Below, one piece after another: positions 27,773 to 28,959 of a DNA stretch of 64,000 nt. The position numbers and the translations under genes were made by a program. The DNA lies in NCBI RefSeq assembly GCF_033153115.1, contig NW_026889754.1:14632001-14696000 (forward strand). The letters are read 5' to 3'. Every line of letters starts with the position of its first letter. Position 1 is the stretch's first letter. This DNA is from Saccostrea echinata. Lineage: Eukaryota. The notes under the pieces were generated by a model that was given only the letters and a program-made list of their open reading frames with translations, was not told the origin of the DNA and did not search any database.

Positions 27773-28119
27773 AATGTGCATTTTGTTTTGTATGATGGCA
27801 CAGTTATGGGGCACAATAATCCCCATGCCTTTGTGTTGACCAAGATGTCATTTTCACTTTGTATTACTGTATTGTGTTGCATGTATTGACCTGGTAAAAC
27901 ATGTCTATGAAGTTTAAAATTTGAGATGTGTGTATTGGCCAATTTTCATTCAGGTTCAGTTCTGATGTTCATTCTTATAGAAGTCAAAATTTAGGGGGGG
28001 GGGGGGGGGAGGTATGTTATGATTTGGTTAATCTGATATTGTTATCCGGAATTATGTGATCTTGTATTGTTGGTTCTGTGTTATATAATACAATTGTGAT
28101 GGTTTGGGCCGTGGATATC

Positions 28120-28193
28120 GGCCTGGGTAGCTCAGTAGGTAGAGCACCTGACTAGTGATGCAGGGGTCCCGGGTTCGATTCCCGGTCCAGCCA
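28120..28193 (+). ncRNA. tRNA-Thr(AGT)-like Pol III promoter module in the TRIM 5' LTR
   Basis: A box TAGCTCAGTAGG, D stem gctc/gagc, cctg/cagg anticodon stem with ctAGTga loop, T arm ccggg-TTCGATT-cccgg (B box); acceptor stem bulged; TTTT at 28198-28201. Confidence 0.75.
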
Positions 28194-28351
28194 TACATTT
28201 TCTCCTTTCCTGTTACAGATTTGGTGCCGTTGACCACCCCTGGACTTGCAGGTGAAAGTCCTGCCAGGGGCAAATAAGAACTTGGGTTGTGTCTTCGAGG
28301 GCGAAGACAAATTAAGGAGGGAGGAATGTGATGGTTTGGGCCGTGGATATC

Positions 28352-28425
28352 GGCCTGGGTAGCTCAGTAGGTAGAGCACCTGACTAGTGATGCAGGGGTC
28401 CCGGGTTCGATTCCCGGTCCAGCCA
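28352..28425 (+). ncRNA. Second identical tRNA-Thr-like module in the TRIM 3' LTR
   Basis: Identical to 28120-28193 (offset 232). Confidence 0.75.
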
Positions 28426-28959
28426 TACATTTTCTCCTTTCCTGTTACACAATAAAGTAGTTCTAAAAATGGCAGCCTTTTATTAAGCACGTGTTGTGGT
28501 CACTATCGTCTAGAAGGACATAACAAAAAGTACCATATTTGTTCTGGTTTGTAAAATGTATATTTTAATATTATCTGCAATATTTTTATGTGCTCTTCAA
28601 GAAATATTATATTTTCTCTAGTCAACATGTTTTTCTAATGATGCCATAATTATTTCATCTAGTCAAGAAATTTTTCACTTCAACCTGCAGTATTTTAACT
28701 CAACATTTTTTAAATTGTTTTATTTTTTTCTCATATGCAATTGATTTATAAAAATTTTTATGTCAGTTTTTATTTGTAATGTTTTTATTTTGAAAAATAT
28801 TCAGGTAAATTTTTGTTACTGTTTAATAATAAACTTTTGCATTCTCTGAAGTATTTGTTGTGTTAAACTTATTTACTACCATCATATACCACCATCATAA
28901 TTATACCTTACATTAAAGTATAATCAGAAGATTTAAATTTCATGGAAGTGCATATCAGA

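What the first reader, a model, noticed from the sequence alone, without database searches (positions are those of the whole stretch)
28095..28449. 355-bp LTR retrotransposon whose LTRs are built around a tRNA gene (SINE-like promoter on a TRIM chassis)
Seen: identical 123-bp TG..CA LTRs, CAAT TSD, tRNA-His PBS, PPT and no coding capacity. About 60% of each LTR is a tRNA-Thr(AGT)-like cloverleaf with intact A and B boxes. Known: plant Cassandra TRIMs do this with 5S rRNA. From memory, tRNA-containing TRIMs with 4-bp TSDs in animals have been named Helenus, so this may belong to that group (not verified here). Inference: a Pol III-driven parasite of Gypsy RT/integrase. Identical LTRs, and absence from the host's otherwise identical 5' LTR, imply very recent activity.
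Basis: partly seen in the sequence, partly recalled or inferred. Interest (0 to 1): 0.88.

Follow-up and report, generated by a model that had tools for sequence, protein, structure and literature searches.

The report
Helenus tRNA-LTR mini-retrotransposon, oyster genome
A 355-bp non-coding LTR retrotransposon whose repeats carry a tRNA-like Pol III promoter has recently inserted into another retrotransposon's LTR; it is real and young, but it belongs to the Helenus group already described in oysters in 2024.

Summary
There are two identical 123-bp TG..CA LTRs (28095-28217, 28327-28449), each with a tRNA-like unit (Rfam tRNA, 48.8 bits) that has intact A and B boxes. The 109-bp internal part has a tRNA-His PBS and a PPT, and the element is flanked by a CAAT duplication. 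The insertion splits the 3' LTR of a Gypsy element, whose otherwise identical 5' LTR keeps the empty site.

The genome holds at least 187 LTR/PBS junctions, more than 20 checked copies with their own perfect 4-bp duplications, tandem arrays, and copies 100% identical to this one.

It is a member of a published group. Kojima 2024 (PMC10886601) named these elements Helenus. His Helenus-2_SaGl (Saccostrea glomerata; LTR 123, internal 108, TSD 4, His PBS) is about 95% identical to this copy.

Three things are added here:
- an aberrant copy that carries 40 nt of the genome's own tRNA-His at the PBS, a fossil of priming by that tRNA;
- a candidate His-primed Gypsy helper;
- two internal hairpins that covary between Helenus families.

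The scan has noted the same kind of element on other pieces of this genome. Interest is low to moderate.

The parts
28091..28094 (.). left target-site duplication CAAT
   Evidence: the same 4 bp is present once in the empty site at 20721-20724
28095..28217 (+). 5' LTR, 123 bp, TGTG..TTACA
   Evidence: 100% identical to 28327-28449
28095..28120 (+). inferred U3 (upstream of the tRNA-like unit)
   Evidence: inference from the position of an internal type-2 Pol III promoter; not shown
28121..28193 (+). tRNA-Thr(AGT)-like unit in the 5' LTR; A box 28128-28139, B box 28172-28182, anticodon position 28154-28156
   Evidence: Rfam tRNA, 48.8 bits; ARAGORN, irregular loop
28198..28201 (+). TTTT run 5 nt after the tRNA-like unit; candidate Pol III terminator and R/U5 boundary
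   Evidence: at least 90% of 61 aligned LTRs agree with the window copy at each of these positions; its function is inferred
28218..28326 (+). internal region, 109 bp, no coding capacity
28222..28236 (+). primer-binding site TGGTGCCGTTGACCA, complementary to the 3' end (+CCA) of the genome's tRNA-His as 9 nt + a 1-nt T bulge + 5 nt
   Evidence: own tRNA-His gene, 7 copies; L061 fossil; Fig. S2C of PMC10886601
28237..28270 (+). hairpin 1, directly after the PBS (CCCCTGG..GCAGG-loop-CCTGC..CAGGGG)
   Evidence: the equivalent hairpin in the Helenus-1-like copy L059 has z = -3.2
28290..28309 (+). hairpin 2: 8-bp stem with an AGGG loop, 4 nt upstream of the PPT
   Evidence: z = -2.95; stems differ by paired changes in other Helenus families
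28314..28326 (+). polypurine tract AAGGAGGGAGGAA
   Evidence: every base agrees with the window copy in at least 90% of 33 aligned internal regions
28327..28449 (+). 3' LTR (tRNA-like unit 28353-28425, TTTT 28430-28433)
28450..28453 (.). right target-site duplication CAAT
20645..28525 (+). host Ty3/Gypsy element. 5' LTR 20645-20796. 3' LTR 28015-28094 + 28450-28525, split by the TRIM. 5-bp TSD AAAAG at 20640-20644 and 28526-28530. Its PBS region starts TTGGCGACGAGG, which is not the His PBS.
   Evidence: weak, sub-threshold gag and protease matches; RT, RNase H and integrase clear
20721..20724 (.). empty target site CAAT in the host's 5' LTR
   Evidence: the two flank matches overlap by these 4 bp

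Best explanation
This is a young copy of a Helenus-type TRIM ('TRIMp3'), a 355-bp non-autonomous LTR retrotransposon. It belongs to the same family as, or a sister-species version of, the published Helenus-2_SaGl.

Shown here:
- It has the full cis anatomy of an LTR retroelement: TG..CA LTRs, PBS, PPT and a 4-bp integrase-type TSD.
- It has spread to about 190 or more internal-bearing copies, plus tandem arrays. Many further LTR-core hits stand alone and may be solo LTRs.
- The family has been active from old times (intra-element LTR identity 88.6%) to very recently (100%).
- This copy inserted into an already resident Gypsy LTR.
- tRNA-His is the physical primer.

Inferred:
- The tRNA-like unit supplies an internal A/B-box Pol III promoter.
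- Transcription starts near the tRNA +1 position in the 5' LTR (about 28121).
- It must read through the weak T4 run at 28198-28201 and stop at the same run in the 3' LTR (28430-28433). That would give an RNA of about 313 nt, in which the tRNA-like unit is R, 26 nt upstream is U3 and the last 16 nt is U5.
- Gag, RT and integrase come in trans from a His-primed Ty3/Gypsy family. The best candidate is the family represented by L066.
- The two conserved hairpins next to the PBS and PPT are the likely cis signals for packaging or priming.
For: Anatomy.

Empty site in the host's identical 5' LTR.

Copies in the genome:
- At least 46 full-length matches, 4 of them at 100%.
- 21 of 26 inspected copies have perfect, different 4-bp TSDs.
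- 187 LTR/PBS junctions at 2 mismatches or fewer, against 0 in the control.
- Intra-element LTR identity of 88.6-100%.
- Arrays of the form LTR-I-LTR-I-LTR flanked by a single TSD (L003).

Published family (PMC10886601): definition and bivalve distribution. Helenus-2_SaGl has LTR 123, internal 108, total 354 and TSD 4. Exact 14-16-mers from this copy occur in its LTR and internal sequences. Read by eye, the LTR differs at 6 of 123 positions and the internal part at 4 of 109.

Primer: the genome's tRNA-His gene is known. In L061, a Helenus-2-type 5' LTR plus GATT is followed by 40 nt that match the reverse complement of tRNA-His positions 76 to 36 (37 of 40 identical), and then by LTR positions 41-123. 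The whole is flanked by the TSD CTTA.

Candidate helper, L066:
- 18-nt perfect His PBS.
- PPT and LTR start TTAAGGGGGGAGGAA|TGTAGTGA, against TTAAGGAGGGAGGAA|TGT(A/G)ATGG in the TRIM.
- LTR end TTCCGGTTACA, against TTCCTGTTACA.
- Protease, RT, RNase H and integrase in Gypsy order.
- At least 20 pol copies at 93-100% identity.

Hairpins.
Against: - No transcript evidence.
- A T4 run 5 nt after the tRNA-like unit in the 5' LTR should stop much of Pol III before the PBS. A full-length template therefore needs read-through.
- Within-family conservation of the A and B boxes is uninformative, because every position is at least 80-90% conserved in these young copies.
- The helper assignment rests on short motifs. 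The 5' LTR terminus is about as similar in the unrelated host Gypsy (11 of 14 positions).
- The inspected helper copy has broken frames and no clean TSD.
- The helper lacks hairpin 2.
- No autonomous element shares the TRIM's own PBS variant or hairpin.
- The PBS pairs with tRNA-His only as 9 + 5 nt around a bulge.
Confidence: 0.85

Rival explanations
1. It is a TRIM transcribed by Pol II or by read-through from neighbouring promoters. On this reading the tRNA-like unit is a relic of an old SINE insertion into the LTR, or serves another purpose such as structure or packaging, and is not the working promoter.
For: The T4 run directly after the tRNA-like unit (28198-28201) would end most Pol III transcripts before the PBS. 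This copy sits inside a Gypsy LTR that has its own promoter context. Kojima himself states that promoter function is unvalidated.
Against: The A and B boxes are the parts conserved across distant Helenus families, while the rest of the LTR diverges (PMC10886601 section 3.5). The elements stay within the length range of Pol III products. Cassandra, the 5S analogue, is reported there as transcribed from its Pol III promoter. A U3 of only 26 nt leaves little room for a Pol II promoter.
Confidence: 0.1
2. The element is mainly a vehicle that multiplies a working tRNA-Thr gene.
For: The Rfam tRNA score of 48.8 bits is above threshold. Kojima lists seven bivalve Helenus families that could encode tRNA-Thr.
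Against: There is a C-C mismatch at the second acceptor pair and an extra base in the anticodon arm. ARAGORN cannot assign an isotype. The anticodon position reads AGT here but AGA in the 95%-identical Helenus-2_SaGl, so the anticodon is not held constant.
Confidence: 0.03
3. It is not a retroelement but a local tandem duplication or short satellite that happens to contain a tRNA pseudogene.
For: Arrays of the LTR-internal unit exist (L003, L022).
Against: There are dispersed copies on many contigs, each with its own 4-bp TSD. A PBS and PPT sit exactly at the LTR borders. A precise empty site exists. An array (L003) is itself flanked by a single TSD.
Confidence: 0.01

Closest known systems
Helenus-2_SaGl (Saccostrea glomerata; Kojima 2024, PMC10886601, Data S1 and Table S1)
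   Same: LTR of 123 bp, internal part 108 versus 109 bp, total 354 versus 355 bp, and a 4-bp TSD. Same GATT spacer and the same unusual His PBS with an extra T (TGGTGCCGTTGACC). Same hairpin 2 and PPT, and the same LTR ends. About 95% identity read by eye (6 LTR and 4 internal differences).
   Different: In this genome the LTR core has T62/G66 in 90 of 100 listed copies, and none has the A62/A66 of the published consensus. The anticodon position therefore reads AGT, not AGA. The window copy also belongs to a small young subfamily (G at LTR position 4, A at position 43; 18 LTRs at about 12 loci). It is probably a sister-species version; the species name is hidden from me.
Helenus / TRIMp3 as a group (fungi, animals, Selaginella)
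   Same: tRNA-derived sequence with A and B boxes in both LTRs, PBS and PPT, no ORF, 4-bp TSD as in animal members, and Gypsy-type PBS relatives.
   Different: Nothing categorical. This report adds a primer read-through fossil, a candidate helper in this genome, and conserved internal hairpins that the paper does not mention.
Cassandra (plant TRIM with 5S rRNA in its LTRs; Kalendar et al. 2008, as cited in PMC10886601)
   Same: Same design principle: a small-RNA Pol III promoter inside the LTRs of a TRIM, and tandem arrays.
   Different: Cassandra carries 5S rRNA, not tRNA, is found in plants, and is 565-860 bp long. It has an independent origin.
tRNA-derived SINEs (SINE2)
   Same: A tRNA-like head with A and B boxes, and short non-coding parasitic RNA. 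The window itself holds such SINE heads at 32340, 42808 and 62586.
   Different: SINEs have no LTRs, PBS or PPT. They are copied by LINE machinery and end in a tail or simple repeat.
biv-TRIM (Satovic et al. 2019, PMC6934838)
   Same: A bivalve TRIM with solo repeats and tandem arrays.
   Different: biv-TRIM has terminal repeats of 202-218 bp, no identifiable canonical PBS and no tRNA-like LTR core. It is an unrelated family.

Membership tests
Helenus (TRIMp3) | TRIM architecture: two short LTRs around a short non-coding internal part, total length below about 1.3 kb | tested here: met
   123 + 109 + 123 bp; no Pfam match in any ORF
Helenus (TRIMp3) | tRNA-derived sequence with A and B boxes inside each LTR | tested here: met
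   Rfam tRNA, 48.8 bits in both LTRs; TAGCTCAGTAGG and GGTTCGATTCC read directly
Helenus (TRIMp3) | PBS next to the 5' LTR, complementary to a tRNA 3' end | tested here: met
   9 + 5 nt complementarity to the genome's own tRNA-His; the L061 copy carries 40 nt of tRNA-His at this site
Helenus (TRIMp3) | PPT next to the 3' LTR | tested here: met
   AAGGAGGGAGGAA at 28314-28326
Helenus (TRIMp3) | 4-bp TSD (animal members) | tested here: met
   CAAT here, with an empty site; 21 of 26 other copies have perfect 4-bp TSDs
Helenus (TRIMp3) | Transcription from the Pol III promoter | not testable with these tools
Also unvalidated in the literature.
Helenus (TRIMp3) | Mobilisation by a Gypsy-superfamily helper (animal members) | tested here: inconclusive
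   The L066 family shares the His primer, a near-identical PPT and the 3' LTR terminus, but shares no longer sequence and there is no functional test
Helenus-2_SaGl family | At least 80% identity over the LTR and internal part to the published consensus | tested here: met
   Exact 14-16-mers found in the Data S1 entries. A by-eye alignment of the printed sequences gives about 95%.
Cassandra | 5S rRNA-derived sequence in the LTRs | tested here: not met
   The Rfam scan of the region gives tRNA only, with no 5S match
SINE2 (tRNA-derived SINE) | Single tRNA-derived head, LINE-type tail, no LTR, PBS or PPT | tested here: not met
   LTR, PBS and PPT are present and TSDs have a fixed 4-bp length

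The most novel reading that the evidence does not exclude
The whole tRNA-like unit is the R region of a Pol III-made genomic RNA. That RNA exists only through read-through of the T4 run in the 5' LTR and ends at the same run in the 3' LTR. Two structured elements are the cis signals by which bivalve Helenus elements hijack Gypsy particles: a hairpin right after the PBS, and a purine-tetraloop hairpin (loops AGGG, AGGA or GGGA) just before the PPT. The stems of these hairpins change by paired substitutions between His- and Lys-primed families. The L061 fossil would then be the first direct trace of tRNA-His priming for any Helenus element.
Probability: 0.35. Interest if true: 0.45.

Novelty: already known. 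Interest (0 to 1): 0.28.

Why it matters
As a class, these elements show that LTR retrotransposons, like SINEs, can swap their Pol II promoter for a captured small-RNA Pol III promoter. They also inflate tRNA gene predictions in oyster genomes. That point was made by Kojima in 2024.

What this locus offers is a clean worked example:
- an insertion younger than a still-identical Gypsy LTR pair, with the empty site preserved 7.4 kb away in the same element;
- a small, very young subfamily (about a dozen loci) that suggests ongoing activity;
- a fossil cDNA that pins down the primer tRNA;
- a concrete candidate helper family.

Together these make Pol III dependence and trans-mobilisation directly testable in an oyster.

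Tried and rejected
- **Read evidence.** There is therefore no transcript or polymorphism evidence.
- **Helper search by shared TRIM-specific sequence.** Hairpin 2 with a non-TRIM upstream context gave only 2 variant TRIMs. The TRIM's T-bulged PBS with a non-TRIM downstream context gave 1 variant TRIM. No autonomous element shares these sequences.
- **Other His-PBS loci.** L068 showed no LTR pair within 10 kb. The L069 Gypsy family fits the TRIM's PPT and termini less well. None of the odd His-PBS loci holds a tRNA gene.
- **TSD of the L066 helper copy.** It could not be read cleanly, because the 3' LTR end is altered.
- **Cross-family covariation by tool.** The MAFFT alignment of Helenus-2-like and Helenus-1-like internal parts (A1) misaligns the 3' strand of hairpin 2, so I did not run the count of structure pairs. 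Covariation therefore rests on single-sequence folds and on reading the published sequences.
- **Solo-LTR ratio.** 256 exact LTR-core hits against 40 exact junction hits is not clean, because the core 27-mer is shared with at least one other published Helenus family (Helenus-4_CVi-type).
- **Not done.** I built no consensus of any element and singled out no copy as intact.

Full report

Yes. The stretch 28095-28449 consists of two 123-bp direct repeats that are 100% identical (28095-28217 and 28327-28449). They begin TGTG and end TTACA, and enclose 109 bp. CAAT precedes and follows the element (28091-28094, 28450-28453).

Each repeat holds a 73-nt tRNA-like unit (28121-28193 and 28353-28425):
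- Rfam's tRNA model scores it at 48.8 bits, against a gathering score of 29.
- ARAGORN finds it too, but reports a four-base 'anticodon', that is, an 8-nt loop.
- In the Rfam alignment the unit has a C-C mismatch at the second acceptor pair and one extra base in the anticodon arm. The anticodon position reads AGT (Thr).
- The A box (TAGCTCAGTAGG, 28128-28139) and B box (GGTTCGATTCC, 28172-28182) are canonical.

The internal part starts GATT-TGGTGCCGTTGACCA and ends AAGGAGGGAGGAA. The one ORF across the element (112 aa, minus strand) has no Pfam match.

**2. The empty site**

The element sits inside the 3' LTR of a Ty3/Gypsy element that spans 20645-28525.
- The host has 152-bp LTRs, a 5-bp duplication AAAAG, and RT, RNase H and integrase in Gypsy order. 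The gag and protease matches are weak and below Pfam's thresholds.
- The 80 bp left of the TRIM and the 76 bp right of it are each 100% identical to the host's 5' LTR (20645-20724 and 20721-20796).
- The two matches overlap by exactly CAAT at 20721-20724.

This is as clean a demonstration of insertion with a 4-bp duplication as sequence alone can give. It also shows that the TRIM arrived after the host, whose own LTRs have not yet diverged.

**3. Is it a family of mobile copies?**

The window's genome is 923 Mb in 425 contigs.
- There were 2473 first-look candidates. Of the 40 scored, nearly all were full-length. Four placements at three loci are 100% identical to the window copy.
- In 26 copies I inspected, 21 have perfect 4-bp duplications, all with different sequences (CTTG, TAAG, CAAG, AAGC, ATAT, AAAG, ATCG, GTTG, CATG, CTGG, TAAC, GGGT, AGCA, CATT and others). 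Three more match at 3 of 4 positions.
- The LTR/PBS junction occurs 187 times at 2 mismatches or fewer (40 exact, 0 in the reversed control). Many differences are CpG transitions.
- Identity between the two LTRs of a single copy runs from 88.6% to 100%, with a median of 94.7%. The family is therefore old and still, or very recently, active.
- Arrays of the form LTR-I-LTR-I-LTR exist (L003, flanked by one TAAG duplication; L022 with five or more LTRs).
- The window copy belongs to a small young subfamily marked by G at LTR position 4 and A at position 43. This subfamily has 18 LTRs at about 12 loci among 60 exact hits.

Conservation of the A and B boxes among these copies is real (at least 90%), but it is uninformative, because every position is about equally conserved in such young copies.

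**4. What is it called?**

Kojima (Biology 2024, PMC10886601) named TRIMs with a tRNA-derived sequence in their LTRs Helenus. He proposed 'TRIMp3' for TRIMs with a Pol III promoter. He reports 4-bp duplications for animal members and lists 51 families in five orders of pteriomorph bivalves. These include His-primed families and seven families with a tRNA-Thr-like unit.

His Table S1 gives Helenus-2_SaGl from Saccostrea glomerata as LTR 123, internal 108, total 354 and TSD 4. Exact 14-16-mers from the window copy hit that family's LTR and internal sequences in Data S1. His Fig. S2C shows the same odd PBS with the same GATT spacer.

Reading the printed consensus against the window copy, I count 6 differences in the LTR and 4 in the internal part, about 95% identity.

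The genome here is probably a sister species rather than S. glomerata. Among the first 100 LTR cores listed in contig order, 90 carry T62/G66 as in the window copy. None carries the A62/A66 of the published consensus. That difference changes the anticodon position from AGA to AGT. This argues against selection for tRNA function.

**5. The primer**

The genome's tRNA-His-GTG gene (seven identical 72-nt copies) pairs with the TRIM's PBS as 9 nt, a one-base T bulge, then 5 nt.

Stronger evidence comes from L061 (contig C10). There, a 5' LTR of this family plus the GATT spacer is followed by 40 nt that match the reverse complement of tRNA-His. The match runs from the CCA end to about position 36 (37 of 40 identical; the three differences are transitions). 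It lacks the T bulge and runs through the T arm into the anticodon stem. The sequence then jumps to LTR position 41 and runs to the LTR end. The whole is flanked by a perfect CTTA duplication.

The simplest reading is a cDNA in which reverse transcriptase copied the attached primer tRNA far beyond the usual 18 nt and stopped near position 37. Reverse transcriptase then switched template, and integrase inserted the product. The link to a modified base at position 37 is my inference from general tRNA knowledge. That tRNA-His was the physical primer follows directly.

**6. The helper**

The canonical His PBS (TGGTGCCGTGACCAGGA) occurs 92 times in the genome, against 0 in the control. Among the 30 loci fetched, several are other Helenus families.

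Seven to eight belong to one autonomous-type family. One copy of that family (L066) has the following features:
- 1201-bp LTRs that are 99% identical to each other;
- protease, RT, RNase H and integrase in Gypsy order, though in broken frames;
- an 18-nt perfect His PBS.

Its PPT and LTR start read TTAAGGGGGGAGGAA|TGTAGTGA, against TTAAGGAGGGAGGAA|TGT(A/G)ATGG in the TRIM. Its LTR end reads TTCCGGTTACA, against TTCCTGTTACA in the TRIM. At least 20 pol copies of this family lie at 93-100% identity, so its activity overlaps in time with the TRIM's.

A second His-primed Gypsy family (L069) fits less well.

Caveats: the motifs are short, and the 5' LTR terminus is equally similar in the unrelated host Gypsy. 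No autonomous element shares the TRIM's PBS variant or its hairpin. I rate this helper assignment at about 0.5.

**7. How it most likely works**

Shown: integrase-type insertion, tRNA-His priming, repeated amplification and recent activity.

Inferred:
- Pol III initiation driven by the A and B boxes, near 28121.
- A TTTT run lies 5 nt after the tRNA-like unit (28198-28201). At least 90% of aligned LTRs agree with the window copy at each of its four positions. A run of at least four T follows the unit in 6 of the 9 published bivalve Helenus LTR sequences that I saw.
- If this run is the terminator, most transcripts from the 5' LTR end as RNAs of about 80 nt. Only read-through molecules reach the same signal in the 3' LTR.
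- That would give an RNA of about 313 nt with R equal to the tRNA-like unit (about 80 nt), U3 of 26 nt and U5 of 16 nt.

This is the Pol III version of the retroviral poly(A)-signal problem, and the paper does not discuss it.

The internal part is almost fully accounted for by the PBS, hairpin 1 (28237-28270), a linker, hairpin 2 (28290-28309; 8-bp stem, AGGG loop; z = -2.95) and the PPT.

Hairpin 2 recurs in other families with different but still complementary stems and a purine loop:
- GGTCTTTGG-AGGG-CCAAAGACC in Helenus-1-like copies of this genome (L059; z = -3.5);
- GATCTTCG-GGGA-CGAAGATC, AAATTCG-AGGA-CGAATTT, AACTCG-AGGA-CGAGTT and GAGATG-AGGA-CATCTC in published His- and Lys-primed families (read).

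One published family (Helenus-4_MiYe) lacks it. I take both hairpins as candidate packaging or priming signals. This is inference.

**8. Limits**

- There is no RNA evidence. 
- The species name is hidden.
- I built no consensus and singled out no copy as intact.

**9. Verdict**

The feature is real and correctly interpreted, and it is a good textbook example. But it belongs to a published group, and in effect to a published family. The scan has also flagged the same kind of element on several other pieces of this genome.

Novelty: already known. The new points are modest: the primer fossil, the candidate helper, the hairpins and the terminator logic. Interest: 0.28.

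Noticed in passing
L061:1386-1620 (G000:C10, about 1364927-1365161): An aberrant Helenus-2-type copy. A 5' LTR plus GATT is followed by 40 nt of reverse-complemented tRNA-His (positions 76 to about 36), then LTR positions 41-123, flanked by the TSD CTTA. It is a fossil of reverse transcription reading through the primer tRNA.
   Followed up: yes
window 22500-25100: The host Gypsy element is interrupted between protease and RT by about 2.6 kb of low-GC (25-32%) sequence. 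It has no plus-strand ORF and no Pfam match. It is probably another nested insertion, although the host's LTRs are still identical.
   Followed up: partly
window 32340-32414 (-), 42808-42880 (-), 62586-62660 (+); shared body at 32070-32201, 42540-42671 and 54666-54797: tRNA-Thr(CGT)-like units followed by a shared non-tRNA body. These look like copies of a tRNA-derived SINE, not Helenus, since no LTR pair, PBS or PPT is seen. A tRNA-Ser(AGA) call lies at 54869-54959.
   Followed up: partly
L066 (G000:C1:10778000-10787999), element from 990: A His-primed Ty3/Gypsy family with 1.2-kb LTRs and at least 20 pol copies at 93-100% identity. It is the candidate helper of the TRIM. The inspected copy has several frame breaks and an altered 3' LTR end.
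   Followed up: partly
L003:1501-2087; L022:733-1855: Tandem arrays of the TRIM. L003 has 3 LTRs and 2 internal parts, all identical, within one TAAG duplication. L022 has 5 or more LTRs.
   Followed up: partly
L029 (G000:C30:3180063) and L030 (G000:C27:2850647): Two TRIM copies on different contigs share the same flanks and the same TSD (CATG). This is either a duplicated segment or an uncollapsed haplotype.
   Followed up: no
genome-wide, e.g. G000:C18:1565513 and 1565756: A Lys-primed Helenus family with the junction ACATTTGGCGCCCAACGTACAAA (as in the published Helenus-4_SaGl) has 35 exact hits. These include pairs spaced 243-244 bp apart, i.e. arrays.
   Followed up: no
window 45237-46690 and 2275-3306: Tandem repeats with periods of about 165-169 bp and about 146 bp.
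   Followed up: no
window 28121-28433 (fold): In the predicted 313-nt RNA, the pyrimidine-rich trailer and U5 of the 5' end pair with the PPT and U3 of the 3' part (z = -2.9). This would bring the two ends together. It may simply reflect purine/pyrimidine tract complementarity.
   Followed up: no
They were left out of all later searches.
   Followed up: no
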